Sequence record: MN047793.1
DNA: 64,000 nt
Reading direction: 5' to 3' (one strand)
Part shown: positions 21,515 to 64,000 of the stretch, one piece after another
Position numbering within the stretch: position 1 is the first letter of the stretch
How the letters are laid out: every line of letters starts with the position of its first letter
The notes under the pieces: model-generated
Seen by the model: only the letters and a program-made list of their open reading frames with translations
What the model was told of the DNA's origin: nothing
The model's database searches: none
Made by a program: the position numbers and the translations under genes

Positions 21515-21590
21515 TTGGTAATAAATTGGGCCGAAATTCGGCCCAACACCAGCACTAAATAGTTCTATACTATTTTAGGACTGACCAAAC

Positions 21591-30500: not shown

Positions 30501-31409
30501 CAACAGGTATTCACCAATAAAGACCTATCGCGTGATACTATCATTTCCGTGCTGAGCAACCCAAATACTCAATTCGAATATGTGAATATCGAAGAGTTCT
30601 TGTCCCGTCATAACTTCGCAACTCCGGAAGATATTATTCAGGCAATGAATGAAATCTATGTAAACTTCTCAGTGTCTGAAGTTAATAAGATTTTCTTCGC
30701 AGTATTACATGATGCCATGAGTTTGAAGATGGAGCATGCAGAAATATTCAAGACATCATGGGTAGGACTCCAGATTTCTAAGAATGTAGTACCATCAATT
30801 GCTGTACCATACGATGAACTTCGTTTGGTTCCTGGCCCAGATTGTGCGACAACACCCCCCGCACCATCACCGACACCATCCCCAACAAGTACACCAAATC
30901 CGTCAACCACGCCTACACCGACACCCAGTCCCACACCATCAAATAATATTTGTGGTGGTGGAGTTAATGACAGAGTATTGGAAGAAAGTGAGGGACGCAT
31001 TACTGAAGATGGAGAATGTAGAACATTAGAGCCGAATGCTGTCCCGGTAACACCTACACCGACACCATCTCCTCGTGTTGCTGTTACTGTTGTAGGTGTC
31101 ATCACAATCGATTCGGAAGGTGGTTACCATTTTGATATTGGTACATATTGTGGGTCAAGTCCTATAACTTCACTACAATTTTTGGGAGATAGTGAATTAA
31201 GTCAAGATGTCACATTAACATGTGGAGGAACCGCATTGCCAGGAATTTATTATGCATATAATAAGCCTGCGGCTACATTAATTGGTAATGAATGGTATAC
31301 TGCAAATATAGATTTTCCTCCAACAGCCGAACGCTATATTGTAAGAACCTTGATAAATGGTAATGAAACAATCTATCTCCGATTAGTTAACCCAAATTCA
31401 GAGGTATAA
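21591..31409 (+). CDS. Giant baseplate wedge protein (gp7-like, 3272 aa) with Thr/Pro-rich C-terminal linkers
   Basis: Follows gp6; FNWVPPIDMDKMVNYRDYYW, QFWQGMIQNKGT, DEFWAYKVAEFG motifs; late promoter ACTAAATA 21554-21561; GTG start. Confidence 0.7.
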   Translation: MADKNSDYKKKHLNLNDFLPATNRGEFMDSLNKNLFNRYLTKDEFDHIVGIIGDADPNDKINKQITERSSFRQANQLQPVVSKKIGSINHFMSFEDFMTRIGRTGVDTDKFDEWGNALQFNWVPPIDMDKMVNYRDYYWDSLVNRDHSIPQYITIKSQQNWSAARFRQSLKTLVDVVGLTNVASANASQKKIAIAGNLVDTFRAGEHFVLSQADGSLDLLSIRNVTLNVATGNTELETNEAFSTSTPLTAYLTRADISVTSISGNKVTVSGDFSNLLIKDYVIGINTSALKLMEIESSSFDALTNVTTITVAGLNQNNFTKISLFPTVSLMQAEAEVSVNPTSILPQGQWSNDTIGKLLWYSNTELLNGSTGRTVFGSTLLEDITKDFTAFGIQTSDLLEIAEGNKGSGLYSVAAVSPTQIFTNNQFFSAQNISYRVIRPFSVESISSTVSPGNVSPNALWFNPTNDSLYQWNGSTWNIVLVGLSLLKTLISDRKVVNYSNKNDWTADNHWVHRSQITEYTGMIRAQMPIIEYFPYIELSETSYSTKLWRYRKDVNSTYLTSSTPPKLVELFNFRYSGNEFAFTDLRTMVFHNKYGNFVSELKAGDVMRLSGFTQNDGLYTVKSVSFAQPSQNARAVSTIEFDNPIIATNDLPIGATFAPELTANGDKFTGLSSKHWEFGGITDISASSLLPEKNPMLDINVGTVTSNGFESIIGLYSQTYSSQGNVLVEPTLFFDNSLHDLVLYDDYQEGDIRVYVNGERLYGAFEDFASNINPDYVGGIRFINGYTVRSTDVIRIELGEYALADIGLRAVEVNTASGPVLYNLTNIRKIEQRKGEGNQYPYFALRDIFGKRLNLATSIFRFLESDTSPVNSNTLKRIVSTGDGTDYSFVQELKNPQTGQLYCYYDFQQIGDELQTIWKRGTYSEQYVPLKIDGQWEMPNQWYYNVSHDNYTEVKLTEIFRHFKSIIDVQSQPGLFSKTSGLFFLDDQINYGIGGTIKEHNDGFDSLVSSILVENGNPVTVIEFAKNQYDNQLRYIKERFYQEAASLFLADETVITANDLQSFITDSLINYVENNGKFDQWFGDSTSYNPTTKLGVRNWIASLPQFGLEARQRPYIVKDSDQNLYEVHCHDGHVVNVAFTPAMNEQLLRRAVGKSPSITQLVTNENVPFPTTVNGNQLSIGTYLIRTNTVAKTRKLYRATQLGVWQELDLNSIFANAVLELETRLYNTLDVNTDAINFKSVYDFSKVESNSGYSSLMEEQFQAYAVTEGIDSPLVNTSRFRQNNPFTWNYYHSPIKNDPLTGNISYNTAGTWQALYENVYGTAYPHLEPWKLQGYVNKPTWWDTEYADITGLRRWKIVMWANVFNGIVPTSGTTPAGNPGTSVPGQITNRFSYLPVNVSGTTTDDGYAPDDILPPYWNSINTSDTRVRGLYDPNFGEFVTTPQLNFEFGQNGLVEWQWKQSNAYAYDRLIVAYKLDPMRFMHQTFGAEYQVVSCLQISKETEKVFSHSDMIFHGDYQDDTNDIYRAHGLNQWYVHYNRYSGFDGVSSEFRSLWKEWETDLAYLVGAFLDTPSFRINSDFFDITTKDYEIAVKKTKGIRDVWLNSLNATAITVPSQYAKLRDQGIGWTVEFANTNPVSRPIEYFATQNYSVNLNTGTSTFRTYSYPLKSADVTAARGYQQATFNSPVALNLLTGLSNQTYTANITFNNTTTVSLSIAGTTVTTFSDLIDNINNQLGTSGVMVIENGNLVVYSGNSTSSTSVEIADGNLFNAITGFVSFEDPATTSNKFEKVFRIDGNFYGTFVDAGSIIIRNAGVFNGTYTISNVYYDSATFQTLVFVNESVTLPTTGAVPVTGVIEPVNAKTLPDEWTTGTVVYFNTTGYLPNNLDDELPYYLIRVNAREFRVAETAEAAEKGIAITPSGNAMGEVFIGNILMTFNALGGTLTDYNWRRHAVDTRYVENSSTLSISGIQQMVDFLTGFDEYSQAQGFRYRNVNGENADPVTGRNNDWQTETEKFINWLYALRNSQQETMLRYDVVGNASNNALAMTSGSVPNWANGTAVVLLPQNGSTLPPEFDNPLSSTVPYYVIRVANNTNEFKLAATAYDAAKGNAITLTGNGSGTFQVMVYKAITKFPSYELNPFKNYIWINHETGVLANVLDDDYTDPMSASRLFDNNLLELNAQNVLVFREDKESRISLTGDSITNNESGKTNSYMAGMHLFFDGFEHMIRFEDRSVDNSLIYDSFFGLNTPRFYVEFDRQQDFTLRPNVGGFFMSGSSLVQNFESTVNDMRYYYDSVKAPEGRATTDLVRQSLGYDGAKEYMDDLKINPKTQFQFWQGMIQNKGTNKAVTAFVNQDTFDTALVDEFWAYKVAEFGDNKERNHIEMKLLPSDVVKNELRVEFIAPENTAVDSTFTSVALTDLSRWWNQPDQIQAMSPNEAFFFNAKVVNYIADLAPWIKVVNGKRIFQSPSYYMDAVVVTYFNPLTKKTVTLNEGLEYKFLNAKIIEFMVDLNTLPTVSMSMLSYDYDSQNPAKVIDKDAGQVVATLPIWNPAMGHYFDAAYYAVDLHRPTDPAIYTNSLDGSDTGNATWKNNHVGTVWLDNKLEQYVPYYDKTVYPSTGARISRWGKLAPWAEINLYQWTRTLIAPEDYDEIARRQSYDMSIADADKETGTTYKRLYLNSNALDPETSNLDPFWVEVKDTHYDFTAGLSEDSMNNTLGGKVVEVYINAVYRETIEFEDGNAVRAYFTQFNFGDYCHVIARAEVPTSEQLEAGVYRYFTPHTIEKRFDVKSGQTYNVYYYWVTDKKQPLSDLNPSVSLYSAKRQLTDMSEPYIILQGLRTPDFGYGLIFGHVFDEFAFNLPYRYTQMVAKGLHGTVKDNNRSIIRFTRDFTLRDKLDADSITPKNRHEEWKLFREQQLEKVDRYLWNKITEALIGFRLSTDYNSANTNKPIPSLNRILFDRLYQADTQYGLGDQQVFTNKDLSRDTIISVLSNPNTQFEYVNIEEFLSRHNFATPEDIIQAMNEIYVNFSVSEVNKIFFAVLHDAMSLKMEHAEIFKTSWVGLQISKNVVPSIAVPYDELRLVPGPDCATTPPAPSPTPSPTSTPNPSTTPTPTPSPTPSNNICGGGVNDRVLEESEGRITEDGECRTLEPNAVPVTPTPTPSPRVAVTVVGVITIDSEGGYHFDIGTYCGSSPITSLQFLGDSELSQDVTLTCGGTALPGIYYAYNKPAATLIGNEWYTANIDFPPTAERYIVRTLINGNETIYLRLVNPNSEV
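30849..31073 (+). repeat. Pro/Thr/Ser-rich low-complexity repeats in the giant wedge protein
   Basis: TTPPAPSPTPSPTSTPNPSTTPTPTPSPTPS (30849-30941) and VPVTPTPTPSP (31041-31073). Confidence 0.9.
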
Positions 31410-31447: not shown

Positions 31448-32107
31448 ATGTCAAAACGTATTTCCGAATTAGATAATGCCTCACAGATTCCAGCTAATCC
31501 AAACTCACTACTTGAGATTGCAGAACCCAACAATGGGTCACCATCTGGTTACGTAAGTCGAAAGATACCATTATCTTCGATTGGCGGATCAGGAAGTAGT
31601 GGGCCAAGTCATCGTTTTTATTTTTCTGGAACAGAGATATTAGATGGCTTTACATCATTTACATTTGCGAGAATTAATTACAGTGATCTATATCTACTAA
31701 CTCCGTCTGAGGTTACACAGAATGGTAGTTTTGAAGCTGCAACTATCGATGTTTCATTATCTGTAGTAGGTAGTGATGAAGGTACTAATCGAGTAGGAGC
31801 CTCATCATCAAGAATCGTATATCTTCGTGATGACTATACTTACATGAATTATTTGGCTAGCGGTTCTTCAAATTTGAATAGTAATTCAGCACCTATTAGT
31901 TTACCATATTTTGTGCCAGATTATTTCGGTAATAGCCTTCCTCCAATAATTACTAATGTTATATTTGATGATGATATCAATATGTTCTCTATTAACGCGA
32001 GCATTGCTACTAATCCCTACGGATCAATGCCACAAGAGATTACATATCGTGGATATCTTGACATCACAGTCGTACGTAGTATGACAGGTTCTATTCCACA
32101 AACATGA
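31448..32107 (+). CDS. Putative virion structural protein
   Basis: MSKRISEL N-terminus typical of fibre/appendage proteins; in late operon. Confidence 0.5.
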   Translation: MSKRISELDNASQIPANPNSLLEIAEPNNGSPSGYVSRKIPLSSIGGSGSSGPSHRFYFSGTEILDGFTSFTFARINYSDLYLLTPSEVTQNGSFEAATIDVSLSVVGSDEGTNRVGASSSRIVYLRDDYTYMNYLASGSSNLNSNSAPISLPYFVPDYFGNSLPPIITNVIFDDDINMFSINASIATNPYGSMPQEITYRGYLDITVVRSMTGSIPQT

Positions 32108-32688
32108 TAGATGTTCATATATTATTGATGGGTGATGAACGCTCCGATTTACTAGAGCAATGTCTAAACTCATTAAAATATGAACCTATAACATTGCATA
32201 AATGTGATGGAGTTCCGGGAGATATACGTACTGCTAGAGCGAACGCTATAAGCCAGGGAACAAATGATTATGTTGGCTGGGTAGACCCTGATGACTTCAT
32301 AATTCCGGGAGCATACCAATTGCTGTTGGATAATATTGGCGATAAAAAGTTTGCTTGGTGTAATGAAGAAGTATGGCATATGACTCCAGACCTAAGTGCG
32401 GTTACTGCGACTCATATACGCAAGCGACCCCACCATATGCATATTATCCATCGTAGTTTAATTAACTACAACCTGATTCGTAATGAGGTTCCAAGAAGAA
32501 CCCCAGATCGATGGGTAGAAATGCTTACTAAGCAGGGAGTACATGTAAATTCTGTAGGCTATGTTTGGAGAGAATATTCAACATCAGCTTCACGAATATT
32601 ATTCGCTCCTGATGATGAACAATGGCACGAACAACGTAGGAAGCATTTTCTACAACAGAATACTTCGATAAATAAGACAACTAATTAA
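32104..32688 (+). CDS. GT-A fold glycosyltransferase (GT2-like)
   Basis: LEQCLNSL, ARANAI..G.NDYVGWVDPDD (DxDD) signature. Confidence 0.75.
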   Translation: MIDVHILLMGDERSDLLEQCLNSLKYEPITLHKCDGVPGDIRTARANAISQGTNDYVGWVDPDDFIIPGAYQLLLDNIGDKKFAWCNEEVWHMTPDLSAVTATHIRKRPHHMHIIHRSLINYNLIRNEVPRRTPDRWVEMLTKQGVHVNSVGYVWREYSTSASRILFAPDDEQWHEQRRKHFLQQNTSINKTTN

Positions 32689-33930: not shown

Positions 33931-33957
33931 AAAAAGCCCGCTTTCGCGGGCTTTTTT
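33931..33957. terminator. Bidirectional intrinsic terminator
   Basis: AAAAAGCCCGC-TTTC-GCGGGCTTTTTT between convergent operons. Confidence 0.9.
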
Positions 33958-33972
33958 ATTGCACTCTACACT

Positions 33973-35613
33973 TTAATTTGTGTAGAGGTCATTTTCGCGA
34001 CGTGTACTGCCGTCATAATGATACACCCGATTATGGTTAATTGGAGTAGCCAATAGACTGCCTACCTTTAGCTTTCCGTCACGCATGTGCATCATAGTTT
34101 GACTCATCCAAGTCTGTTCATACAGTCCTGCATAACGAACTTCCATGAATACTACCTGTGTACCTTTTTTAGTAAACATGATCGGCCAATTACAGTAGTG
34201 GTATTCACCTACAGCATAAGGTAGTCCTTTATGGGTTCCAGTATAGTCGATCTTTACTTTCCATACTTCAGTACCATCTTCACGGTCAGGGAAGTATTCG
34301 GACTTTTTACTTAGAGGTAAATTCTCCCATGCCCAGTTCTTATGGTTATCACCATAAAACTCACTGAATGCCAATTTCAAGTAATCTAGTTTTTCAGATT
34401 TCATGATATCTAGGCATTTATCAAACAGGTCATTATGATAGGTACTAAAGCCACTCTTACATAGACCAGCACCGGGAGCATGGAATAACATATCGTCTTC
34501 GAAAAATACCATGTATTCGTGCTTAGACGCTAAGAAATGTTCGGCTGCAAACTGTCTCCCGCCATTGATGCCAATGTTATCTTTTTTAAATACCTCAAAC
34601 CCATACTGCGTAAATAGTTCTTGGTAACGATCAGCTACTCGTGGGTCAGTAGAATTATCAATCACGTATTTACGAACTTCTTTGAATTCTTTCGGGAATG
34701 TTTCAGACATCGACTTAGCCCATAATTCAAACTGTTGAGGTAAATTATACGTTAACACGTAGAATGCCAGTTCTTCTTCCACATCCATAACTGGCTTGTC
34801 TTTTAAATCTTGAAAATACTTATAAACTAAGCCGTTATTTTCAATCATACGTACATTTACTTTATTAGGATATTTGTAAGCAATAATAGTGAAAATTGAT
34901 TCCTCGGTTCCCATGAGGCGATTACCGAATGATTCTGACATTAGACCATAGTAAATATCATTGATTTCATTAATTGCGTGTTTTGGTCCACCGAATATGC
35001 CACCACGACAGACAAACTGGGTTTCTTTACCAGCCATACGATCCATGGCAGTTTTTTCGAAACCGTGCACTTCCACTGTACCGTCGTAAGGGAATGCCAC
35101 ATAAAGCATCTTGTTTAAGTCTGGAGTAATTCTACGTTCAAATTCCTTATCAATGTATCCTGCCGGATCACCGATAGTATTGGCAATACCAGCATCAATC
35201 CAAAGATAATATTTGGTGTCGAAAAAGTTAAAATGGGTAGCATCGTTCAGGTAGAACTGCTTAGACATTACTAATGGATTGTATAGTTCTAATTTAGCTT
35301 GTGTAGAATCTACAATCCATCCAGACTGACCATACCATTTAGGGTCCACTCGAATGTCTTGAATATCCTTATAGAAAGGAAACTCACGTAAATCATCTAG
35401 CGACTTAAACACTAGACGTGTATTCTCCCGGCTACGATGCTGCCAGATAACTTCTTCTAAGCTAGGCTCGCAGTAAATGACCATTGGGTAATCTACTTTA
35501 AGTAGCTTAGTAAAACTTTCTACATAATGATCAAACGAACGTTTGAAGCCTGATTCTAAATCTCCACGACCTAAATCAAACAGTGCGGTAACTAGGGTAA
35601 GGTTGCTGCTCAT
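33973..35613 (-). CDS. Two-domain glycosyltransferase: HtrL/YibB-like N-domain plus GT2-like C-domain
   Basis: TLVTALFDLGR, YNPLVMSK, YYLWIDAG, GGIFGG, EESI; then VLTYN, VIDNS, NIGINGGR, YMVFFEDD. Confidence 0.75.
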   Translation of the reverse strand: MSSNLTLVTALFDLGRGDLESGFKRSFDHYVESFTKLLKVDYPMVIYCEPSLEEVIWQHRSRENTRLVFKSLDDLREFPFYKDIQDIRVDPKWYGQSGWIVDSTQAKLELYNPLVMSKQFYLNDATHFNFFDTKYYLWIDAGIANTIGDPAGYIDKEFERRITPDLNKMLYVAFPYDGTVEVHGFEKTAMDRMAGKETQFVCRGGIFGGPKHAINEINDIYYGLMSESFGNRLMGTEESIFTIIAYKYPNKVNVRMIENNGLVYKYFQDLKDKPVMDVEEELAFYVLTYNLPQQFELWAKSMSETFPKEFKEVRKYVIDNSTDPRVADRYQELFTQYGFEVFKKDNIGINGGRQFAAEHFLASKHEYMVFFEDDMLFHAPGAGLCKSGFSTYHNDLFDKCLDIMKSEKLDYLKLAFSEFYGDNHKNWAWENLPLSKKSEYFPDREDGTEVWKVKIDYTGTHKGLPYAVGEYHYCNWPIMFTKKGTQVVFMEVRYAGLYEQTWMSQTMMHMRDGKLKVGSLLATPINHNRVYHYDGSTRRENDLYTN

Positions 35614-35618
35614 AAAAC

Positions 35619-36362
35619 TTAAATAATCCTCATAATTTTATCGTGATGTAAATACCTAAATGTATGTAGAACTGGATAAGGTCTCATGTAATCAAGTATT
35701 GGGTGATGCGGTAATTTTGATTCGCTCATTGCGTAGGAAATTTCCAAAGCTTCTATGAACGGATTTATGCCACGGTCATAACAGCGCCGTGTGATCATTT
35801 CCCATTGTGCCATAAACTCCCTAAATTCTTTACATTTAGGCTTGAAGAACATAAAAACCTCAATCGGCATACGGGCTTTGATATTAATTAGTTCAATACT
35901 GAGAGCCGTAGCTTTTGGCTCAGTCATAAACTGGAGAGCTACTTCTTCACATGGACGATTGCGGAAACGAGCAATAAGCCCTTTATCTTCGTGGTCAATA
36001 AACTGCTGCCATTCTTCTTCATTCCATCCAATCATAAATCCATCAGCATCAGCATGTACGATCATATCGTAATCCTGCATGCCGTAAGCTACTTTAGTAG
36101 GAAGCATTTTTAGATTATAATTGAATTGACGTTCGGCATACCAAATGTTTTGTTTGGTAACATCCTCGATAGCAAACAGCTTAACTCTATCTATTTTTTC
36201 TGGGTGATTACGCTCGACGTATCCAGAAAGTTCTTTAACGTCATCAGTGATAATCAGTATGTCACCTTTAGTCAATAATAGAACGCAATCAATTAAGGTG
36301 GTCACCTTAAAAGTGTATGCGGTACCGAGAGCTAACGTAGCAAATATGTATTTCTTATCCAT
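35619..36362 (-). CDS. GT-A fold glycosyltransferase (GT6/GT8-like)
   Basis: FATLALGTAY, ILIITDD, FNYNLK, IVHADAD (DxD); start moved to ATG 36362. Confidence 0.6.
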   Translation of the reverse strand: MDKKYIFATLALGTAYTFKVTTLIDCVLLLTKGDILIITDDVKELSGYVERNHPEKIDRVKLFAIEDVTKQNIWYAERQFNYNLKMLPTKVAYGMQDYDMIVHADADGFMIGWNEEEWQQFIDHEDKGLIARFRNRPCEEVALQFMTEPKATALSIELINIKARMPIEVFMFFKPKCKEFREFMAQWEMITRRCYDRGINPFIEALEISYAMSESKLPHHPILDYMRPYPVLHTFRYLHHDKIMRII

Positions 36363-37215
36363 GTAACACCTTGAAGAAGTCTGAAAAGCTAACATCTTCT
36401 CCAGGGCGATACATTTGTTCCCAATCTTCGTGATACCACGTATTGAAGCTGAATTGAGTGAAGTTGTCGGGATGTGCTTGATGAAGATGATACATAATCT
36501 CTTCTTCTTTTAGTAATACTCCATTATCGACTACTCGTTGCATATGATGGAATGCTTCAGCGATATACGATAATACTTGGTCGCGTTTTCCACCAAACAT
36601 TCCACCAATCACACCAAATTCTGGACGGTAACCGTAAACCTTTTGGAAGTCATCTGACCCATGGTTTACTTGTTTCGAGCGGATATTTAAAACTTTATCA
36701 CCAACATAATTACACAAATCGTTATAAAGATCACGATGTTGTGTAATCATATCAAAGTCATAAAAGTTTTTACTAGCTTCGGAACGGAATTTATTGGTAA
36801 TTAGACCACCATGAAATAGTCCGGCATCAATCCAAAAGATACTATCCGTATCATCAAGTTCTGAAACATTCTTCCATAACCAGATAAATTTACCCCACAT
36901 AATTTCCACACATCTAGAACGCCAAGCGGCTTCTGTAGTATATTTTGGGTCTACACCTTTAATTTTATCAATATCCGCATGATAATAGTTAGATTCTAAC
37001 TCTTCAGACACAACCTTAAGATTCGGGGTTGACGTAAAATATTTAACTAAGTCATCATAATGGCGAGATGAAGTATAACAGACGATAGAATATCCACCGT
37101 CTGCTAAAGATTTTAATGATTGAATATACCTATCATAGATGGCGGCGGTATTTCCATTCAGCCGCGTACCTTCTAATCCTGAATATATTGCAGTGACGAA
37201 CTGTGCCTTAAACAC
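36355..37215 (-). CDS. HtrL/YibB-like glycosyltransferase
   Basis: FVTAIY, IMWGKFIWL, IFWIDAGL, IGGMFGG, EEEIM motifs paralogous to 33973 N-domain. Confidence 0.7.
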   Translation of the reverse strand: MFKAQFVTAIYSGLEGTRLNGNTAAIYDRYIQSLKSLADGGYSIVCYTSSRHYDDLVKYFTSTPNLKVVSEELESNYYHADIDKIKGVDPKYTTEAAWRSRCVEIMWGKFIWLWKNVSELDDTDSIFWIDAGLFHGGLITNKFRSEASKNFYDFDMITQHRDLYNDLCNYVGDKVLNIRSKQVNHGSDDFQKVYGYRPEFGVIGGMFGGKRDQVLSYIAEAFHHMQRVVDNGVLLKEEEIMYHLHQAHPDNFTQFSFNTWYHEDWEQMYRPGEDVSFSDFFKVLHG

Positions 37216-37217
37216 GA

Positions 37218-39515
37218 TTATTCCTCTATTAATTTAACTTTATCGATAGAGCCAAGAATCGCTAAGGGTAGATACTCGTGATCCTTCACACTTATCTTAC
37301 CAAGCTGTGAGTACCATAAGTACATCGCTTCCCATTGATTACTTAACCATTCTACGTGTTCAAAACTTCCACCGAAGAACTTGACCGTAGGATGTAGTAA
37401 ACCAATACCTTGACCAAATTTATCAGAAAGCCACTGTTCAGAGAATAATTCATTAGTAACATTTCGTGATGCTGATAAAATCAAATGCGTATTGTTCTGT
37501 GACATGGTAATGATGTTAGTCAACTCTTTATTGAAAGATGACGGAACGAATTGTGCAACATCGACGAATACGTGATGCGACGCTAGGTAGCGGTCTTCAT
37601 TTAGAGCTTCCTTAGTCCAAAGCATACGAATCTTATCAAACGCTTCTACCACAGTGGTGGAACCGTGATAATTTTTAAGATAGATGTGGCGCGGCTCGAC
37701 GGTATATACATGGAATCCAGTTAGGTCAAACTTGGTACTAGTTACGGCATCTGTTATAATAACTACATTATCATACTGACGTAACGTGTTTAGATTTTCC
37801 TCAATAGTTGCATGCTGGCTCGCATCTTGTTCAAATACAAAAGCATTAATTCCCATACCAGTACGTGCTTTTTTGGAACTAAACACAGGTGAACGCTTGA
37901 ATTTGCGGGCATCCTTTTTCTTGAAAACTAGATTACCCTTATAGTAGATCGCATCTAGTTCAGATTCGTCCAGAATCTTGAATGCATCGGATAACCGGGT
38001 AAGAATAGGCTTACCGTTAACATTAAACGAGGTGTTCAAGATAACACCATGACCAGTATGTTTTTCAAATTCTGTAATCAGGTCATAGATTAATTCGTTC
38101 TGTAGGCGGGTAACTGTTTGTAAACGGGCGCTACCATCAGTATGAGTAATCGCAGGCAAAGTCTCTTGCCATTCATCACGCACGTTAGCTACGAAGGTCA
38201 TATGACGAGATTCTACGTTATAATCGTACACGAAGTATTTGTTGGCATCTTCCAGACGGGTAATCGGAGCAAACGGGCGATACCATTCACGATGTTTAAC
38301 CTTGTGGTTTAATACATCCTTCATGTCGCCAGACGGATTACAGATAATGCTACGATTACCTAATGCACGAGAACCGTGTTCAGAATTACCTTGAATTAGA
38401 CCGACAATGTTGTTGTCTGCTACAAACTCTCCTAGCTCCTGTACTGTGACATTTTCATACACAAAATACTTTGATTGATCTTGGATGTAAGTAGAGAATT
38501 CACGATCATCCATTACGGGAAGCCCGGAATATGTAAGGTCTACAGTATGCTTAGGACTTAAGTGCCATAAAATACCACCTACGGAGATACCGCAGTCGTT
38601 TGTATTAGGAGGAACGAAAACATTACCGCCCTTCATTTCAAGGAGACGGGAATTGAGTAGTACATTAAGCCCACAACCGCCTGACACGCTCAAGGGAAGG
38701 TGTTTGTACTTCTCAAGGTATGGCTCTGCTAATTCAAGGAAGAACTCTTCAAACGCACGCTGAGTGGTTGCAGCAATGTCCCAAGCTACCTGACCTGAAA
38801 ACCGTGTGGTTTCGAAATCGAAACCTTCAAGTAAACCAATAGCAGCAAACAGACTTGATACAGCATCAGTTCGTAACTCTAGACCACCAATATAAGAGTC
38901 TCCACTGTAGACGAACTTACGGTAATATTCTACGAAATGTGGTAACCAATCTTCTCTAACTGTTCCATAAGAACATAGACCCATTAATTTACCAGCATAC
39001 ACCAGATTACCAATGGATAGAGGATCACGCTTGATATCATCAAGGTAATCAGCGAGAAGCATATAGGGGAACCCCAAATCATTGGGTAGACGATCTAGAA
39101 GCTTAATACCAGTATTACGGTCAGCCTCGTAGAAGTTAAAATAGCTACCATCACCACCGCCATCGAAGGAAATTACTAACGATTTATCGAACGGTGATTG
39201 GTAGAATGCAGCCGCAGCATGGGCCACGTGATGGTCTGCTGCGATCTGCTGTTTGAAACGGAACTTAGGAATGATATTAGAAACATATCCAGTAATGTAC
39301 ATATCAACTTCTGATTTACCCGCTTTCTGTAGCAAGTAATCAGTAATTTCATCAAACACTACTTGTGGGTGAGAACATGGCATGTAATTAACTAAACCGA
39401 TGTTCTTCGAATTCAACCAACGCTCTACTTCTACAACGGTGTATTCGCCTTTGTAGTACATTGAGATAGCGGCGTTGTGTGATCCATACGCCGATATCAC
39501 CAGATAATCATTCAT
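37218..39515 (-). CDS. NodU/CmcH-family O-carbamoyltransferase with C-terminal degenerate HtrL-like domain
   Basis: HNAAI, HHVAHA..AF..SPF, SFDGGGD, GKLMGL.SYG, SGGCGLN, GSRALGNRSI, KHREWYRPFAP, H.DGSARLQTV, LNTSFN..GKPI. Confidence 0.92.
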   Translation of the reverse strand: MNDYLVISAYGSHNAAISMYYKGEYTVVEVERWLNSKNIGLVNYMPCSHPQVVFDEITDYLLQKAGKSEVDMYITGYVSNIIPKFRFKQQIAADHHVAHAAAAFYQSPFDKSLVISFDGGGDGSYFNFYEADRNTGIKLLDRLPNDLGFPYMLLADYLDDIKRDPLSIGNLVYAGKLMGLCSYGTVREDWLPHFVEYYRKFVYSGDSYIGGLELRTDAVSSLFAAIGLLEGFDFETTRFSGQVAWDIAATTQRAFEEFFLELAEPYLEKYKHLPLSVSGGCGLNVLLNSRLLEMKGGNVFVPPNTNDCGISVGGILWHLSPKHTVDLTYSGLPVMDDREFSTYIQDQSKYFVYENVTVQELGEFVADNNIVGLIQGNSEHGSRALGNRSIICNPSGDMKDVLNHKVKHREWYRPFAPITRLEDANKYFVYDYNVESRHMTFVANVRDEWQETLPAITHTDGSARLQTVTRLQNELIYDLITEFEKHTGHGVILNTSFNVNGKPILTRLSDAFKILDESELDAIYYKGNLVFKKKDARKFKRSPVFSSKKARTGMGINAFVFEQDASQHATIEENLNTLRQYDNVVIITDAVTSTKFDLTGFHVYTVEPRHIYLKNYHGSTTVVEAFDKIRMLWTKEALNEDRYLASHHVFVDVAQFVPSSFNKELTNIITMSQNNTHLILSASRNVTNELFSEQWLSDKFGQGIGLLHPTVKFFGGSFEHVEWLSNQWEAMYLWYSQLGKISVKDHEYLPLAILGSIDKVKLIEE

Positions 39516-39543
39516 GAGGTTCCCTATTAGTTATACTGTGTAG

Positions 39544-39550
39544 TATTTAC
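39544..39550 (-). promoter_or_regulatory. Possible late promoter (GTAAATA) for carbamoyltransferase-GT genes
   Basis: TAAATA core about 30 nt upstream of ATG 39515, same spacing as other late genes. Confidence 0.45.
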
Positions 39551-39560
39551 TATTTTTGAA

Positions 39561-40913
39561 TTAGGGTTGAACATCCTTTTCGATACGATTACCCCAACCG
39601 CGACTACGACTATGCGGCCATACAATATACTTTGTAGCAGGCTTATCACCGCGCCAAATTAAGCGGAAATCAATCCACTCATTCTGAACGTAGTTCTTAA
39701 TTTCATCTTCCTGGGCATCCTTACGGAAAATTTCAGTACCATTATCATCAGCTGAACCAACATACCAGAAATCATAATCGTATGGTTCTTCACCTAACTC
39801 TGCGCGATGTACTAATACACGAATATCATGTGAACCAATGAACGTAGCTTTCCACTGTTCTTCAGTTTCATACTTGAAGTCACCCGGTGGGTCTAGACGA
39901 TCAATAGTCTTCTGCTGAACACCACGATATTTGAAACTGATACCAGCATATTCTTCATACTGAAGAACGGTTCGCTTATCACCAAATCCATACTTACCAA
40001 AGTCAATCTGTTTCGGGTCTTCACCATCCATACCAAATAGAATGCGGTTACGCTTGTGGCATAGATCATTACGCTGTACCCAATCGAGTTCTACGCGACC
40101 TTTATTACGCTGGTTAGTGGTGTGGTCATCCCATACCTTGATTCGCCCCTTACGCGTATATTCATGCCATGCAATTAGGCGGTGAGGGTGGAACAAGTCA
40201 TAACCGTGAGTATATGCACGAACAGCAATAGAAATCTCTTCTCCATGAAAGAAGTATTCAGGATCATGCTGAACTTCAACAGCAAATGTACCATCAGCAA
40301 ACGCAAAGTGAGCAGAGAAGAAGCGAGCGCGGGTAGGTTTATCAAGTTCTCTCCAATTATCAATCGTGGACGGCATAAAGAACACTGCACCCTCTGGAAT
40401 GAAACGGTCAAAGTCCATCTTCCATGGGTCCATTACACGAGCAGCTGGATCATTTTCAGGATCAAAAGACGGGATGTATGCAGTTAGTAGCGGCTTTTCA
40501 TAACCATCTTCACGCAGACCTTCAAGCATATCGATACAAACCTTATCCCAGCCTTCAACGAAGCGGTGATGAGAGTCTAATTGCATTGTATACTTTTCGC
40601 CAGAGTATAGCTGTTGAATCTGATGACGTGCCCAGCATGCGCCTTGGGTTTTATGGAAATGTAAATCGATAACGGTGAACTTCGCACCATCCTTACTTAG
40701 ATGTAGTAGTGGTAGGTCCTTACTGAATTCTGACCCACTTTCCAAGACAAAGCCTGCGTCTAGGAAGATATCAATCGGGTCTTCTTCACCATGCTGCCAG
40801 CAAATACCGACGTGTAGGTTTTCAGGATGTTCCGCATGAGTCAGCATATCAAGAAGAGTAGGGACTAATTGCGGATCACGGTAAGCTGCCATTTGTACAA
40901 AAATTGTATTCAT
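39561..40913 (-). CDS. GT60-family polypeptide GlcNAc-transferase (Skp1 Gnt1 / mucin OGNT-like)
   Basis: IFVQMAAYRD, GACWAR, QLDSHHRF..GWD, LTAY, FFSAHFAF, DP..FFHGEE..AVR.YTHGYD.F.P, WHEY. Confidence 0.85.
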   Translation of the reverse strand: MNTIFVQMAAYRDPQLVPTLLDMLTHAEHPENLHVGICWQHGEEDPIDIFLDAGFVLESGSEFSKDLPLLHLSKDGAKFTVIDLHFHKTQGACWARHQIQQLYSGEKYTMQLDSHHRFVEGWDKVCIDMLEGLREDGYEKPLLTAYIPSFDPENDPAARVMDPWKMDFDRFIPEGAVFFMPSTIDNWRELDKPTRARFFSAHFAFADGTFAVEVQHDPEYFFHGEEISIAVRAYTHGYDLFHPHRLIAWHEYTRKGRIKVWDDHTTNQRNKGRVELDWVQRNDLCHKRNRILFGMDGEDPKQIDFGKYGFGDKRTVLQYEEYAGISFKYRGVQQKTIDRLDPPGDFKYETEEQWKATFIGSHDIRVLVHRAELGEEPYDYDFWYVGSADDNGTEIFRKDAQEDEIKNYVQNEWIDFRLIWRGDKPATKYIVWPHSRSRGWGNRIEKDVQP

Positions 40914-40942
40914 TTAATATTATATCCTATTGGTCTTACAAA

Positions 40943-40974
40943 AAGTTTAGGAGATTTTTCAATCTCCTAAACTT
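40943..40974 (-). terminator. 14-bp perfect hairpin (terminator-like) just upstream of GT60 gene
   Basis: AAGTTTAGGAGATT-4 nt-AATCTCCTAAACTT followed by T-run on minus strand. Confidence 0.65.
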
Positions 40975-50117: not shown

Positions 50118-51521
50118 TCATACTCCATCACCTTGTTGTGATTGTCCATTCTGTTGTTGCTGTTGACCAGCACGTTGCTGACCATTTTGTTGCTGATTGT
50201 TAGGTTGTGGACTATTTGCGTTTGGGTCAGTATTTTTACCAGAGCTACGCAACTCTGCTGCGCGAATCTCACGTGTTCTGGCAGTTCGCATACGTGCTTG
50301 TAGTTCTCGCATCTGGTTCTGCTTTTGTGCATTCTTGTAATTACGAGTATCCACATCATCCGTAGGAAGAATAGCCCACTTCGCAGGTAATTGGGCCATC
50401 TGACGACGAACCATTGCTACAGTTTCACCTTCTTCACCCTCACGAATACCGCTGGCTTGACTTACACGAAATTTAGCGATATCAGCAAGTTTCTTAGCCT
50501 GCTTCTCTGTATCCTTTTGTTTCTCCATGGCAAGTTCCATGCTCGCCAACTCTTCTTGTTCTTTACTTGATGCAACCGCCGCACGTGCAGAAAATTCTGC
50601 CTGTTGTGCACGATAACGTTCAGCTTCAGCTTCAGCTTGAGCCTGTTGTGCAGCAGCTTGAGCTTTAAACATTGATAATACTTTATCAAGGATAGAATCT
50701 GATGATGAGGCCTCTGGTTCAGCAAAATCTTCTACACCATCAGCATCAGCAGATAAATCATCCTCCGGAGCACCACCTAAATCAGCACCACCAGCAGCAA
50801 GAGGATCACCACCTTCTTCACCACCCTCTTCAGAACCATCAGGGTTCATATCAATCGGAGCATTACCGCTAGCTACTGGACCAAATTCATCATCTTCGCC
50901 TCCTGCTGCAATAGGATCATTACCCATACCACCGGCAGCATCCCCATTAGCTTGTGAGTCATCAACCACATCATTAGACTGCCCAATATCTGCGGATTTG
51001 GTAGCCTTGTCCGCGTTGTATACAACGTCTGTAGGAATCTTGGGGAACTCTACGTCAATGATATCGAAACGGTCCTTGAGGCGATACAGAAGCTCTGCCA
51101 TCGATATTTCTTTACCCTCAGTACCAGTTGCAGAAAAAGCTTCCATATCAGCAAGTTCGTGTCCGAGCGTTGCTTCAAACTCTTCAGCTTGGTCTTTGCG
51201 TACAGTCACCTTCATGACATTACCTTCCGAATCTTCAACACCATATGTGGTGTGGTTACGGGCTTCTACTGATTTACCTTCAATACCGCTTAGACGCGAC
51301 AATACGTCTTGCATATCGAATGCTTCGTTAACCCGGATAGGAAAGGGAGTTACGTGCGATGTTTTCAGCCGATTAGCAACACGACCATGAAAGTCTTTAA
51401 GGAAAGACTGTAGACGTGTGCGCTCTTTAGCGCCCAGGCCTGGACCATCTGTACGAACAGCAATGTTTCCGGCAGCAACCGCCCCACCAATAGCTGTTTC
51501 GTTTAGCTTTTGCTTATTCAT
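50118..51521 (-). CDS. Acidic putative prohead core/internal protein
   Basis: TATAAATA 51549-51556; protease-site-like KLNE, RVNE, GIRE; Asp/Glu/Gly linker, coiled coil, Gln-rich tail. Confidence 0.5.
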   Translation of the reverse strand: MNKQKLNETAIGGAVAAGNIAVRTDGPGLGAKERTRLQSFLKDFHGRVANRLKTSHVTPFPIRVNEAFDMQDVLSRLSGIEGKSVEARNHTTYGVEDSEGNVMKVTVRKDQAEEFEATLGHELADMEAFSATGTEGKEISMAELLYRLKDRFDIIDVEFPKIPTDVVYNADKATKSADIGQSNDVVDDSQANGDAAGGMGNDPIAAGGEDDEFGPVASGNAPIDMNPDGSEEGGEEGGDPLAAGGADLGGAPEDDLSADADGVEDFAEPEASSSDSILDKVLSMFKAQAAAQQAQAEAEAERYRAQQAEFSARAAVASSKEQEELASMELAMEKQKDTEKQAKKLADIAKFRVSQASGIREGEEGETVAMVRRQMAQLPAKWAILPTDDVDTRNYKNAQKQNQMRELQARMRTARTREIRAAELRSSGKNTDPNANSPQPNNQQQNGQQRAGQQQQQNGQSQQGDGV

Positions 51522-62884: not shown

Positions 62885-64000
62885 TTACCCGAAAGTCGGT
62901 GACCATGATTTGCCGCCATTACCTTGTAAGAAATTAACTTCTGCTGAAGTTAATGGTCTATTAAATGTGTATATTTCATCAACATCGCCAACGATGCGAC
63001 CATTTGATATTTCATTAAGAACTAAATTACTGTTTGTTCTTGGAGTAAAGTTTAACACTGCCGTTACCATTAGTGCGCCATTTGCATACAGTGATACATC
63101 CTCACCCGACACTGTAATCATGGTGGAAAACCATTGATTTATAGGAATGTCTAAAACTGATAAGGTGAAAGCTTCATTATTTGGGCCAACTATATTCCAG
63201 AATACAAAATTATTTGATCCATCATATCTTAGAGCCACGGTAGGGCCATTAGAAGTGTTACTGTACCCACCAAAAATTGTACCTGTTAGTGCAGTATCCT
63301 GAACTTTAACGAGTCCTCCAATACTAAAGCTGGTGGTATTTAATACGTTCGACTGAGGACCAGAATGTACGGCAGACGTTATTAACCGTTTACCACCTAA
63401 AGGACTGGCTTCATATGTATTGGAAAATCCGATAAGATCGCCTCTTCCTGAAATGTTATTGGCTACGTTATCGTTAAATGACCACCAATCTTCAGATGCT
63501 GCACGAATAGCATTAATCATCGGAGTAATAGTATCTGATGGAGTTACCGAAATTGTTGGCGTTACAGTTCTAGTAGGCGTACGGGTTACTGTTGGAGTAA
63601 TACTACTGGTTACTGTGATGGTAGGTGTCACGCTAGGCGTGATTGTTGCCGACACGGATGGCGTCAGGGTCGGGGTAGAGGTGACTGACGGAGTAGTTGT
63701 TGGGGTAACAGTTGCGGTAACAGTTATTGACGGAGTTAATGTGGCCGTAACCGTTGGTGTAGGGGTTATAGTAGCTGATGGGGTTATACTTGCTGTGATA
63801 CTTGGAGTAGGTGTTACCGTTGCTGTAGGGGTAACTGTCATCGTCGGAGTAGGTGAGGGAGTTATCTGTTTACCCAATAATACATTATATAAATCTGACG
63901 GAACTAATGATGGAGTCTGTACCACATTAGCGATGAACATCTGATATTCAGAAGACCATACTACAGAAGACAGGCGACGCGTCTTGTAAGTAGTAAATGA
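62885..64000 (-). CDS. C-terminal part of a tail fibre/appendage protein: mucin-like Thr/Pro linker plus LamG/ConA-like domain (5' end beyond window)
   Basis: Frame stays open from 64000; about 114-aa T/P/S/V repeat; then WWSFN, SFSIGG.V, W......SG..V.LY.NG, G..DE.Y.FNRPL...EV LamG pattern. Confidence 0.75.
   Translation of the reverse strand, partial: SFTTYKTRRLSSVVWSSEYQMFIANVVQTPSLVPSDLYNVLLGKQITPSPTPTMTVTPTATVTPTPSITASITPSATITPTPTVTATLTPSITVTATVTPTTTPSVTSTPTLTPSVSATITPSVTPTITVTSSITPTVTRTPTRTVTPTISVTPSDTITPMINAIRAASEDWWSFNDNVANNISGRGDLIGFSNTYEASPLGGKRLITSAVHSGPQSNVLNTTSFSIGGLVKVQDTALTGTIFGGYSNTSNGPTVALRYDGSNNFVFWNIVGPNNEAFTLSVLDIPINQWFSTMITVSGEDVSLYANGALMVTAVLNFTPRTNSNLVLNEISNGRIVGDVDEIYTFNRPLTSAEVNFLQGNGGKSWSPTFG
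63521..63864 (-). repeat. Mucin-like (xTP/TVT) repeat region
   Basis: ITPSPTPTMTVTPTATVTPTPSITASITPSATITPTPTVTATLTPSITVTATVTPTTTPSVTSTPT... Confidence 0.95.

What the first reader, a model, noticed from the sequence alone, without database searches (positions are those of the whole stretch)
33973..40913. Candidate phage-encoded protein O-glycosylation operon for decorating its own virion
Seen: five contiguous co-oriented genes (GT60-like, carbamoyltransferase-HtrL fusion, HtrL-like, GT6/8-like, HtrL-GT2 fusion) sit right after the baseplate operon, with a late-type TAAATA upstream of the carbamoyltransferase; tail proteins in this window carry long Thr/Pro/Ser repeats. Known: GT60 enzymes add alpha-GlcNAc to proteins (Skp1 hydroxyproline in Dictyostelium; Thr of mucin-like repeats in Trypanosoma cruzi and Dictyostelium); NodU/CmcH enzymes O-carbamoylate sugars; virion glycosylation is documented in some mycobacteriophages. 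Inference: an initiator-elongator-capping pathway that builds a carbamoylated O-glycan on tail proteins, for shielding, adhesion or receptor mimicry. To my knowledge a GT60-initiated system on a myophage tail is not described.
Basis: partly seen in the sequence, partly recalled or inferred. Interest (0 to 1): 0.9.

Follow-up and report, generated by a model that had tools for sequence, protein, structure and literature searches.

The report
Phage mucin-type protein glycosylation gene cluster
A giant Xanthomonas phage carries five sugar-adding and sugar-tailoring enzyme genes that most likely coat threonine/proline-rich "mucin-like" stalks of its own tail and appendage proteins with a decorated glycan; a relative's paper had suggested virion glycosylation, but nobody has worked it out.

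Summary
The window is Xanthomonas phage Xoo-sp13 (309 kb). Genes Xoosp13_304 to _300 (33973-40913, minus strand) form one terminator-bounded unit:
- a GT60 polypeptide GlcNAc-transferase homologue;
- a TobZ/NodU-type O-carbamoyltransferase with an extra C-terminal domain;
- an HtrL-like GT-A;
- a GT6/GT8-like retaining GT-A;
- a two-GT-A-domain enzyme (HtrL + GT2-like).

A TAAATA motif precedes the carbamoyltransferase gene. It is position-specific upstream of structural genes and conserved in three relatives.

At least 12 Xoo-sp13 proteins carry about 2,700 such residues, joining lectin, beta-propeller and glycosidase domains.

GT60 plus the HtrL/GT2 fusion is a conserved core in related metagenomic jumbo phages. 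Carbamoyl-, sulfo-, pyruvyl- and methyl-transferases swap between them. A Bacteroidota chromosome has the same trio flanking a Thr/Pro-rich protein gene.

For the relative XacN1, published work reports Schiff-stained virion glycoproteins and restriction-digestible DNA.

Best reading (about 0.6): cytoplasmic mucin-type O-glycosylation of the phage's own appendage proteins. The acceptor, the sugars and the timing are inferred, not shown. The XacN1 authors had already suggested virion glycosylation, so this is a new variant of a known kind.

The parts
39561..40913 (-). Xoosp13_304, 450 aa. GT60-family (PF11397) polypeptide alpha-GlcNAc-transferase homologue and proposed initiating enzyme. The D113-S-H115 motif is invariant in 4 orthologues.
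37218..39515 (-). Xoosp13_303, 765 aa. Residues 1-531 are a TobZ/NodU-type O-carbamoyltransferase. Residues 532-765 (37218-37922) are an extra domain found only in about 20 close relatives and possibly a degenerate HtrL-like domain.
36355..37215 (-). Xoosp13_302, 286 aa. A distant HtrL/YibB-like protein, probably GT-A fold, with invariant W-x-D-x-G and G-G-x-F-G-G type motifs in its family.
35619..36362 (-). Xoosp13_301, 247 aa. The annotated start at 36362 is the one homologues support; the mechanical ORF runs to 36395. GT-A fold glycosyltransferase closest to retaining GT6/GT24/GT8 enzymes, with an invariant D105-A-D107 motif.
33973..35613 (-). Xoosp13_300, 546 aa. A two-domain glycosyltransferase: N-terminal HtrL/YibB domain (34828-35613) and C-terminal GT2-like GT-A domain (33973-34827, invariant E372-D-D374). 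More than 1000 homologues share this architecture.
39544..39549 (-). TAAATA late-promoter-like motif, 34 nt upstream of the carbamoyltransferase start. It is conserved at the same place in XacN1, RAS14 and contig L008.
40940..40973 (-). 13-bp hairpin followed by a T-run between Xoosp13_305 and the GT60 gene (terminator-like, -19.3 kcal/mol, z -6.3). A TATAAT-like box follows it. Analogous hairpins precede GT60 in five relatives.
33931..33957 (.). Bidirectional intrinsic terminator (GC stem flanked by A5 and T6) between the convergent baseplate operon and the glycosylation cluster.
62885..64000 (-). C-terminal part of Xoosp13_331 (636 aa; its start lies beyond the window end). It contains the Thr/Pro-rich stalk at 63515-63871 (119 aa) and a ConA-like lectin domain, and it sits next to the gp15-like sheath stabiliser. 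Candidate acceptor.
30825..30965 (+). 47-aa Ser/Thr/Pro linker in the 3272-aa baseplate-operon protein Xoosp13_296. It is conserved in XacN1 and RAS14. Candidate acceptor.
32104..32688 (+). Xoosp13_298, 194 aa. A weak GT2-like protein with a D-P-D-D motif inside the baseplate operon. It may be a sixth glycosyltransferase; whether it belongs to the pathway is uncertain.

Best explanation
The cluster is a phage-encoded, cytoplasmic, mucin-type protein O-glycosylation pathway.

Proposed steps (all inferred):
1. The GT60 enzyme transfers a first sugar, by family analogy alpha-GlcNAc from UDP-GlcNAc, to Thr or Ser in the degenerate x-T-P-T repeats.
2. Four further GT-A domains extend the sugar into an oligo- or polysaccharide. 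These are the HtrL-like g302, the GT6/8-like g301 and the two domains of g300. The g300 architecture is that of bifunctional elongating enzymes and polymerases.
3. The TobZ/NodU-type enzyme O-carbamoylates a sugar hydroxyl.

The repeats form long stalks and linkers in at least 12 Xoo-sp13 proteins, several of them tail- or baseplate-associated.

The likely result is glycan-coated, extended, protease-resistant stalks that carry lectin, propeller and glycosidase heads on the virion.

Shown here: the enzyme families and folds, the operon structure, the repeat proteins, and their co-distribution. Inferred: the acceptor, the sugar identities, the enzyme order, late timing and the biological role.
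For: Enzymes:
- GT60 matches PF11397 at E 1.5e-76.
- Characterised GT60 members are polypeptide alpha-GlcNAc-transferases acting on Thr-rich mucin domains or on Skp1. The Skp1 pathway uses soluble cytoplasmic GTs, including a bifunctional GT2-containing enzyme.
- The carbamoyltransferase matches TobZ, GdmN and NodU.
- g301 is GT6/GT8-like by fold.
- g300 has two GT-A domains, like LH3, COLGALT1, LARGE1, K4CP and PmHS2.
- No protein has a TM segment or signal peptide, and the cluster has no flippase or transporter gene.

Candidate acceptors:
- About 2,700 residues of Thr/Pro-rich segments (roughly 920 Thr) lie in at least 12 annotated Xoo-sp13 proteins.
- These segments link ConA-lectin, RCC1/WD40-like propeller and GTA TIM-barrel domains.
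- 8 of these 12 genes have TAAATA upstream, as does the carbamoyltransferase gene. The genome encodes a gp55-like late sigma factor.

Distribution:
- XacN1, RAS14 and contigs L005-L008, all GT60-positive, carry long repeats.
- The LucasX homologue of the TIM-barrel protein and 42 kb of RsoM2USA, both GT60-negative, carry none.
- Sugar-tailoring enzymes swap in the slot between GT60 and the fusion: carbamoyl-, sulfo-, pyruvyl- and methyl-transferases.
- Jiulongibacter sediminis has GT60, carbamoyltransferase and HtrL/GT2 next to a 262-aa Thr/Pro-rich protein gene and a second GT60 gene.

Experimental evidence in a relative:
- XacN1 virions show at least 2 Schiff-positive bands.
Against: - No glycopeptide, sugar composition or enzyme activity is known for any member.
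- The Schiff-positive XacN1 bands were not identified.
- XacN1 has a further GT9 gene that Xoo-sp13 lacks.
- GT60-positive phage groups B and C show no Thr/Pro-rich ORFs in the 8-21 kb held.
- The negative controls cover only 13.5 kb and 42 kb.
- The GT60 gene has no TAAATA. It sits behind its own hairpin and a TATAAT-like box, so it may be expressed at a different time from the rest.
- The cluster is syntenic with replication genes, not structural ones.
- Thr/Pro linkers occur in many unglycosylated proteins.
Confidence: 0.6

Rival explanations
1. The enzymes build or remodel a glycan that is not on phage proteins, for example host lipopolysaccharide, xanthan-type exopolysaccharide or a lipid-linked oligosaccharide. 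The effect would be to change the infected cell's surface, for superinfection exclusion or to stop progeny being trapped.
For: - HtrL/YibB is named after a gene of enterobacterial LPS-core loci (family descriptions).
- NodU-type enzymes carbamoylate free oligosaccharides.
- Pyruvyl, sulfate and methyl tailoring is typical of polysaccharides.
- Iyer et al. interpret glycosyltransferase clusters of jumbo cyanophages as modifying the host's surface polysaccharide (PMC7824862).
Against: - The cluster has no membrane-anchored GT, no initiating phosphoglycosyl transferase, and no flippase, polymerase or ABC exporter. All five proteins look soluble.
- Known GT60 acceptors are polypeptides.
- It leaves unexplained both the co-distribution with Thr/Pro-rich proteins and the bacterial locus.
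Confidence: 0.13
2. The pathway glycosylates proteins, but not virion appendages. The target would be a host or phage intracellular protein (a Skp1-like regulatory modification or host takeover), and the Thr/Pro stalks are simply flexible linkers.
For: - The closest mechanistic parallel, the Skp1 pathway, is cytoplasmic and regulatory. It uses GT60, a bifunctional GT2-containing enzyme and a GT8-type enzyme.
- The cluster sits in the replication block, and the GT60 gene has a different promoter context.
- Groups B and C have GT60 without nearby Thr/Pro proteins.
Against: - A multi-enzyme, tailored glycan is excessive for switching one target.
- XacN1 virions contain glycoproteins.
- Thr/Pro content and GT60 co-occur in seven phage genomes or contigs and in two of the four bacterial loci.
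Confidence: 0.12
3. The cluster hypermodifies phage DNA by glycosylating and carbamoylating bases, as an anti-restriction measure.
For: - The cluster is co-oriented with and adjacent to DNA polymerase, RNase H and NUDIX genes.
- Phage glycosyltransferases that modify DNA are well known (cited; PMC13326640).
Against: - XacN1 DNA was cut by BssHII, NaeI and SpeI, and those digests were used to settle the genome map.
- Xoo-sp13 encodes a canonical thymidylate synthase, DHFR and dCMP deaminase. No hydroxymethylase or TET-type gene is annotated.
- GT60 is not a known DNA-modifying family.
- The 2026 paper on glycosylated 5-hydroxycytosine mentions neither carbamoyl groups, GT60 nor these phages.
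Confidence: 0.04

Closest known systems
Protist mucin-type O-GlcNAc initiation by CAZy GT60 polypeptide alpha-GlcNAc-transferases (Dictyostelium Golgi enzyme / modB epitope; Trypanosoma cruzi TcOGNT-2)
   Same: - A full-length, high-scoring PF11397 match with a DxH-type motif.
- The candidate acceptors are Thr/Pro-rich, mucin-like repeats, as in the protist substrates.
   Different: - The phage enzyme lacks a signal anchor and would act in the bacterial cytoplasm.
- It has an extra C-terminal region of about 110 aa.
- The downstream enzymes (HtrL-like domains, carbamoyltransferase) have no counterpart in the protist pathways.
- Activity is untested.
Cytoplasmic Skp1 hydroxyproline glycosylation pathway (Gnt1 GT60, then bifunctional PgtA GT2+GT74, then GT8/GT77 enzymes)
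   Same: - Soluble cytoplasmic enzymes.
- GT60 as initiator.
- A two-domain enzyme with a GT2-like half.
- A GT8-like retaining GT-A.
   Different: - No prolyl hydroxylase or Skp1-like target was identified.
- The acceptors are probably many Thr residues, not one Hyp.
- The second domain of the fusion is HtrL-like, not GT74.
- The phage cluster adds a carbamoyltransferase.
Mycobacteriophage virion glycosylation (Freeman et al. 2023, PMC10527164, cited) and chlorovirus PBCV-1 capsid glycosylation by virus-encoded enzymes (cited)
   Same: A virus encodes its own cytoplasmic glycosyltransferases and uses them on its own structural proteins. XacN1 virions stain as glycoproteins.
   Different: - The host is Gram-negative and the phage is a jumbo myophage.
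- The initiator is GT60.
- The acceptors are long mucin-like stalks in many modular proteins, not (from my own knowledge of that work) capsid or tail-tube subunits.
- There is a swappable tailoring slot.
- I did not compare the enzymes themselves.
TobZ / NodU / CmcH / GdmN O-carbamoyltransferases
   Same: Both catalytic domains are present. The match to solved TobZ is E 3e-44 and to the NodU model E 5e-53.
   Different: - It is fused to a 234-aa clade-specific domain.
- Known members act on small-molecule or oligosaccharide hydroxyls, not on protein-linked glycans.
Bifunctional two-GT-A enzymes (LARGE1, K4CP chondroitin polymerase, PmHS2, LH3, COLGALT1, Mimivirus R699)
   Same: The g300 model aligns over both domains with these enzymes (Foldseek E 2e-11 to 1e-8).
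   Different: Sequence identity is only 8-12% and whole-chain TM is about 0.25-0.3. The similarity is in architecture, not orthology. Whether g300 polymerises a repeating unit is unknown.

Membership tests
CAZy GT60 / Pfam PF11397 (polypeptide alpha-GlcNAc-transferase) | Significant full-length match to the family profile | tested here: met
   E 1.5e-76, 258.6 bits against a cut-off of 21. Residues 3-327 cover profile positions 1-350 of 352.
CAZy GT60 / Pfam PF11397 (polypeptide alpha-GlcNAc-transferase) | Metal-binding D-x-H motif of the GT27/GT60 type (assignment of the motif rests on my own knowledge) | tested here: met
   D113-S114-H115 is invariant in the four aligned orthologues.
CAZy GT60 / Pfam PF11397 (polypeptide alpha-GlcNAc-transferase) | Transfers alpha-GlcNAc from UDP-GlcNAc to a polypeptide hydroxyl | not testable with these tools
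   No biochemical data exist for any phage member. The activity is inferred from characterised protist enzymes.
TobZ/NodU/CmcH O-carbamoyltransferases | Kae1-like N-terminal plus YrdC-like C-terminal catalytic domains | tested here: met
   Carbam_trans_N E 2e-27; Carbam_trans_C E 4e-57; PHROG 1601 over residues 5-530; TobZ 3VEN E 3e-44.
HtrL/YibB (PF09612) | Match to the family profile | tested here: met
   g300 N-domain: PF09612 E 2.5e-17 and TIGR02192 E 8e-21. g302: no direct hit, but its family profile matches the g300 N-domain at 99.7% (E 1e-25), and 12 of 71 members hit PF09612.
   No Pfam hit. hhalign shows no match to the g300 N-domain and 56% probability, E 1e-4, against the g302 family over 76 columns, aligning F-F-G-G with G-G-x-F-G-G.
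GT-A fold, retaining GT6/GT8-like glycosyltransferase (g301) | GT-A Rossmann-like fold with a DxD motif | tested here: met
   AF2 pLDDT 96. Foldseek top hits are ABO GTA/GTB, alpha3GalT, the UGGT catalytic domain and XXYLT1, at E about 1e-7 and TM about 0.55. D105-A-D107 is invariant. No sequence-level family assignment was possible.
Phage DNA glycosylation systems (for example T-even glucosyl-hmC) | A pathway for a modifiable base (hydroxymethylase, TET or similar), and DNA refractory to restriction enzymes | tested here: not met
   No such gene is annotated in the whole record; canonical ThyA, DHFR and dCMP deaminase are present. The DNA of the relative XacN1 was digested by BssHII, NaeI and SpeI. 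This rests on annotation only, with no profile search of every ORF.
Virus-encoded virion protein glycosylation (mycobacteriophage / chlorovirus type) | Glycans covalently attached to virion proteins | not testable with these tools
   The only evidence is indirect: at least 2 Schiff-positive bands in XacN1 virions, identities not given.
Surface-polysaccharide (Wzx/Wzy or ABC) biosynthesis cluster | Initiating phosphoglycosyl transferase plus flippase, polymerase or exporter; membrane association | tested here: not met
   None lies in or beside the cluster. The maximum 19-residue hydropathy is below TM level in four proteins; the single 1.82 peak in g301 falls in the model's core helix 14-30 and strand 34-39.

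The most novel reading that the evidence does not exclude
Phages and some bacteria have a complete, soluble, GT60-initiated mucin-type O-glycosylation system with dedicated mucin-like substrates. That would make it a prokaryotic or viral counterpart, possibly a source, of the protist and animal GT60/GT27 initiation step. In this reading the conserved two-GT-A enzyme polymerises a repeating, variably carbamoylated, sulfated or pyruvylated chain (matriglycan- or glycosaminoglycan-like) on virion appendages. Jumbo phages would then carry a proteoglycan-like coat that governs adhesion to exopolysaccharide or mucus and masks the virion.
Probability: 0.2. Interest if true: 0.85.

Novelty: new variant of a known kind. 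Interest (0 to 1): 0.62.

Why it matters
If correct, virion glycosylation is not an oddity of mycobacteriophages. It would be a widespread trait of a large, mostly uncultured jumbo-phage lineage: more than 1000 homologues of the core enzyme turn up in metagenomes.

It would also mean that about a dozen phage proteins are built as mucin-like glycoprotein stalks carrying lectin and enzyme heads.

That bears on several things:
- how such phages move through xanthan-type slime and bind hosts;
- virion stability and antigenicity in biocontrol use against Xanthomonas;
- the evolutionary origin of GT60/GT27-type mucin glycosylation, so far regarded as eukaryotic.

It also gives a concrete, testable function to HtrL/YibB domains, which have none at present.

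Tried and rejected
- Sequence search of the PDB with GT60 and with g300 gave nothing useful.
- Pfam and NCBIfam on g301, g302, the carbamoyltransferase C-domain, the g300 C-domain and their XacN1 and RAS14 orthologues gave no credible family. One call failed on a frame error of mine.
- Profile-profile comparison of the carbamoyltransferase C-domain with the g300 HtrL domain, the g300 C-domain and g301 was negative.
- A single-sequence scan of IMG/VR for GT60 found nothing. The four-sequence alignment was needed.
- Tandem Repeats Finder sees no DNA tandem repeats in the window. The Thr/Pro repeats are therefore degenerate at the DNA level, not recent slippage products.
- The consensus terminator scan did not list the two hairpins that bound the cluster. 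I read them directly and folded them.
- The sigma-70 promoter scan found fewer sites than shuffles, so it is uninformative.
- A literature search for GT60 plus phage found nothing relevant.
- I considered and rejected DNA hypermodification (see the rival explanations).
- I considered whether the repeats might be out-of-frame artefacts. Three Ser/Pro-rich hits are in unannotated or antisense frames and were discarded: window 50770-50850 and 30950-31015, and record 285180-285536.
- The XacN1 supplement does not say which ORFs are the glycoprotein bands.

Full report
**Identity and layout**

The window is 100% identical to Xanthomonas phage Xoo-sp13 (MN047793.1, 309 kb, host X. oryzae pv. oryzae). 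Window 33973-40913 equals record 219973-226913. The five ORFs are Xoosp13_304 to _300. All are on the minus strand and are transcribed from 40913 down to 33973.

Downstream, the cluster converges on the plus-strand baseplate operon (12539-33908). A perfect GC hairpin flanked by A5 and T6 (33931-33957) folds well on both strands.

Upstream, a 13-bp hairpin plus T-run (40940-40973; -19.3 kcal/mol, z -6.3) separates the cluster from Xoosp13_305. So this is a discrete transcription unit. It sits at the end of a block that is co-oriented and syntenic with DNA polymerase, RNase H and a NUDIX gene.

**The enzymes**

- Xoosp13_304 is a full-length PF11397/GT60 protein (E 1.5e-76). Its D-S-H motif is invariant in four orthologues.
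- Xoosp13_303 is a TobZ/NodU-type O-carbamoyltransferase over residues 1-531. It also has a 234-aa C-terminal domain found only in about 20 proteins, all with the same fusion. That domain gives no Pfam hit and no profile match to the HtrL domain of g300. Against the g302 family it gives only 56% probability.
- Xoosp13_302 has no direct Pfam hit. Its family comprises 207 representative clusters. The family profile matches the g300 HtrL domain at 99.7% (E 1e-25), and 12 of 71 members hit PF09612.
- Xoosp13_301 has only 28 homologues, none with a Pfam domain. These support the annotated 247-aa start at 36362 over the longer mechanical ORF. With their alignment, AlphaFold2 gives pLDDT 96. Foldseek places the model with retaining GT-A enzymes of GT6, GT24 and GT8 (E about 1e-7). 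A D-A-D motif is invariant.
- Xoosp13_300 has an N-terminal HtrL/YibB domain. Its C-terminal domain has an N-N-S-T-D-like motif, nearly invariant across the family, and an invariant E-D-D motif. The model (pLDDT 93) shows two GT-A domains. It aligns best with two-GT-A enzymes: LH3, COLGALT1, K4CP, LARGE1, PmHS2 and Mimivirus R699. Domain-wise it aligns with GT2 enzymes TarP and TarS. BFVD hits are phage and giant-virus glycosyltransferases.
- None of the five proteins has a signal peptide or a credible membrane segment.

**Promoter motif**

TAAATA occurs 57 times in the window. That is fewer than base composition predicts. Yet 18 copies lie 22-55 nt upstream of same-strand start codons. The genes they precede include:
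- baseplate wedge;
- the 3272-aa protein;
- tail sheath;
- the gp15-like protein;
- head-completion genes;
- the carbamoyltransferase gene (motif at 39544-39549).

DNA polymerase and RNase H do not have it. The motif sits at the same place upstream of the carbamoyltransferase gene in XacN1, RAS14 and contig L008. The genome encodes a gp55-like late sigma factor.

The GT60 gene itself has no such motif. It has a TATAAT-like box after the hairpin, and hairpins precede GT60 in five relatives. Its timing is open.

**Thr/Pro-rich proteins**

In the window, the long repeat is 63515-63871, 119 aa of Xoosp13_331. This protein has a C-terminal ConA-like lectin domain and lies next to the gp15-like sheath stabiliser. 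The 3272-aa protein has one 47-aa linker.

Scanning the whole record locus by locus shows at least 12 annotated proteins with such segments: _174, _179, _189, _222, _224 to _227, _296, _331, _332 and _343. They hold about 2,700 residues, of which roughly 920 are Thr. In _189, 683 of 996 residues are of this kind.

In the three proteins of locus L003 (_331, _332, _343), the segments contain 36% Thr, 19% Pro, 11% Ser and 10% Val. They join recognisable binding or enzyme domains:
- GTA-type TIM barrel in _332;
- RCC1-like propeller in _174;
- WD40/PD40-like propellers in _343.

Eight of the 12 genes have TAAATA upstream. No DNA tandem repeats are detected. The composition is therefore maintained at the protein level.

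**Distribution**

Among 50,697 phage records, GT60 occurs only in Xoo-sp13, XacN1 and Stenotrophomonas phages CM1 and RAS14. All have the syntenic cluster. RAS14 lacks g301.

The HtrL/GT2 fusion has more than 1000 homologues in metagenomes. IMG/VR yields 21 GT60 loci, in three groups:
- Group A (L006-L008, L026, together with L005, a 345-kb JGI metagenome contig fetched). Jumbo-phage relatives with the same synteny, and with GT60 and the fusion as constant ends.
- Group B. Two tandem GT60 genes plus an HtrL-like gene and the fusion.
- Group C. GT60 genes that match only the catalytic part of the query, near a wedge gene.

Between the constant ends, the content varies:
- carbamoyltransferase in Xoo-sp13, XacN1, RAS14, L007 and L008;
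- a sulfotransferase in L005;
- a polysaccharide pyruvyl transferase and a weak CmcI-like methyltransferase in L006.

This swapping of sugar-tailoring enzymes is what one expects of a glycan-building module.

All GT60-positive jumbo relatives examined carry long Thr/Pro repeats: XacN1 ORF350, 369, 370, 372 and 384; RAS14; and L005-L008 within 10 kb of the cluster.

There are two GT60-negative comparisons:
- LucasX has a homologue of the _332 TIM-barrel domain (57% identity) in a 2021-aa protein with no such segment.
- RsoM2USA is the nearest cultured outgroup (36% DNA polymerase identity). It has neither the cluster nor repeats in 42 kb around its polymerase.

These controls are small. Groups B and C show no repeats in the 8-21 kb held, which is the main open point.

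**Bacterial counterpart**

A scan of one genome per species found four loci. In Jiulongibacter sediminis (Bacteroidota) the gene order is:
- UDP-glucose dehydrogenase;
- NAD-dependent epimerase/dehydratase;
- on the opposite strand, a second GT60-like gene and a 262-aa protein with an Arg-Arg-containing, signal-like N-terminus and a 148-aa Thr/Pro run;
- GT60 (51% identity);
- carbamoyltransferase (47% identity);
- an FkbM-methyltransferase/HtrL/GT2 fusion;
- HNH and McrBC-like genes.

A Cytophagaceae MAG has the same trio. An alphaproteobacterial MAG has two GT60-like genes 3 kb from an ORF with Thr/Pro/Glu repeats. This is independent genomic association of the enzyme trio with a Thr/Pro-rich protein.

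**Literature**

The XacN1 paper (PMC5852040) lists ORF328 (GT9) and ORF334 (the GT60 orthologue) as its glycosyltransferases. It reports at least two Schiff-stained virion protein bands. It proposes that phage enzymes make them, by analogy with PBCV-1. It does not identify the bands.

The same paper used BssHII, NaeI and SpeI digests of XacN1 DNA to settle the genome map. Together with a canonical thymidylate pathway and no annotated hydroxymethylase in Xoo-sp13, this argues against DNA hypermodification.

GT60 enzymes are described as polypeptide alpha-GlcNAc-transferases of mucin domains and of Skp1. The Skp1 pathway is made of soluble cytoplasmic enzymes, including a bifunctional GT2-containing one and a GT8-type one (PMC8724618; PMC3769586). 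Extensive virion glycosylation is established for mycobacteriophages (Freeman 2023, cited). I found no paper linking GT60 to phages.

**Interpretation**

The best-supported model is a cytoplasmic, phage-encoded mucin-type O-glycosylation of the phage's own Thr/Pro-rich stalks (confidence about 0.6):
- GT60 initiates.
- Four further GT-A domains extend.
- The carbamoyltransferase tailors.

The order of enzymes, the sugars, a possible polymerising role of the two-domain enzyme, and the role of the glycan (stiffening, protease protection, adhesion to or passage through exopolysaccharide, masking) are inference.

The rivals are modification of host surface glycans (0.13), protein targets other than virion appendages (0.12) and DNA modification (0.04).

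**Novelty and score**

The general idea, phage glycosyltransferases glycosylating XacN1 virion proteins, is published. Virus-encoded virion glycosylation is a known kind.

To my knowledge, the following are new:
- the GT60 assignment and its match to a genome-wide set of mucin-like substrates;
- the five-gene architecture with three HtrL-type domains;
- the swappable tailoring slot;
- the wide metagenomic spread;
- the bacterial counterpart.

I rate it a new variant of a known kind, interest 0.62.

Noticed in passing
window 32104-32688 (+): Xoosp13_298 is a 194-aa protein inside the baseplate operon. It has weak GT2 hits (E about 1e-3) and a D-P-D-D motif. Its XacN1 counterpart is ORF326. XacN1 also has a GT9 heptosyltransferase-like gene (ORF328) at this place, which Xoo-sp13 lacks.
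   Followed up: partly
L036 4949-15151 (Jiulongibacter sediminis NZ_LGTQ01000005.1): A bacterial chromosome carries the GT60-carbamoyltransferase-HtrL/GT2 trio. It also carries UDP-glucose dehydrogenase, an epimerase/dehydratase, a second GT60-like gene and a 262-aa Thr/Pro-rich protein with a twin-arginine-like N-terminus. The island is bordered by HNH and McrBC-like genes.
   Followed up: partly
window-wide; for example 21550-21560, 59985-59995, 62885-62895: TAAATA sits 22-55 nt upstream of 18 gene starts, mostly structural genes. It is under-represented elsewhere. The genome encodes a gp55-like late sigma factor (Xoosp13_280, outside the window). This looks like a T4-type late promoter core.
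   Followed up: partly
L005 11583-12236; L006 11353-12797: In related metagenomic jumbo phages, the slot that holds the carbamoyltransferase in Xoo-sp13 holds something else. L005 has a Sulfotransfer_4 protein. L006 has a polysaccharide pyruvyl transferase plus a weak CmcI-like methyltransferase.
   Followed up: partly
record 108649-111639 (L032 8649-11639), outside the window: Xoosp13_189 is annotated 'mucin-16-like protein'. It is 996 aa, 683 of them in Thr/Pro-rich segments, and has no Pfam domain. Whether it is a virion protein is unknown.
   Followed up: no
window 21591-31409 (+): A single 3272-aa ORF follows the baseplate wedge genes. It is conserved in XacN1 (3313 aa) and RAS14, and has one conserved Cys-flanked Ser/Thr/Pro linker near its C-terminus. 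I did not examine its function.
   Followed up: no
window 58211-59140 (-): A 309-aa protein with a C-terminal zinc-ribbon (PF13240, E 1e-6), between the NAD-metabolism genes and the tail sheath gene. A TAAATA lies 55 nt upstream.
   Followed up: no
window 55083-56301 (+): Genes annotated NAD+ synthetase and glutamyl-tRNA amidotransferase sit between structural modules. They are auxiliary metabolic genes, conserved in XacN1.
   Followed up: no
L004 17820-20350 (RAS14): The Stenotrophomonas phage cluster lacks the GT6/8-like gene g301. The glycan is therefore expected to differ between close relatives.
   Followed up: no
window 50770-50850 (+), 30950-31015 (-): Ser/Pro-rich translations in frames antisense to or offset from annotated genes. 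They are composition artefacts of the opposite strand, not genes.
   Followed up: yes
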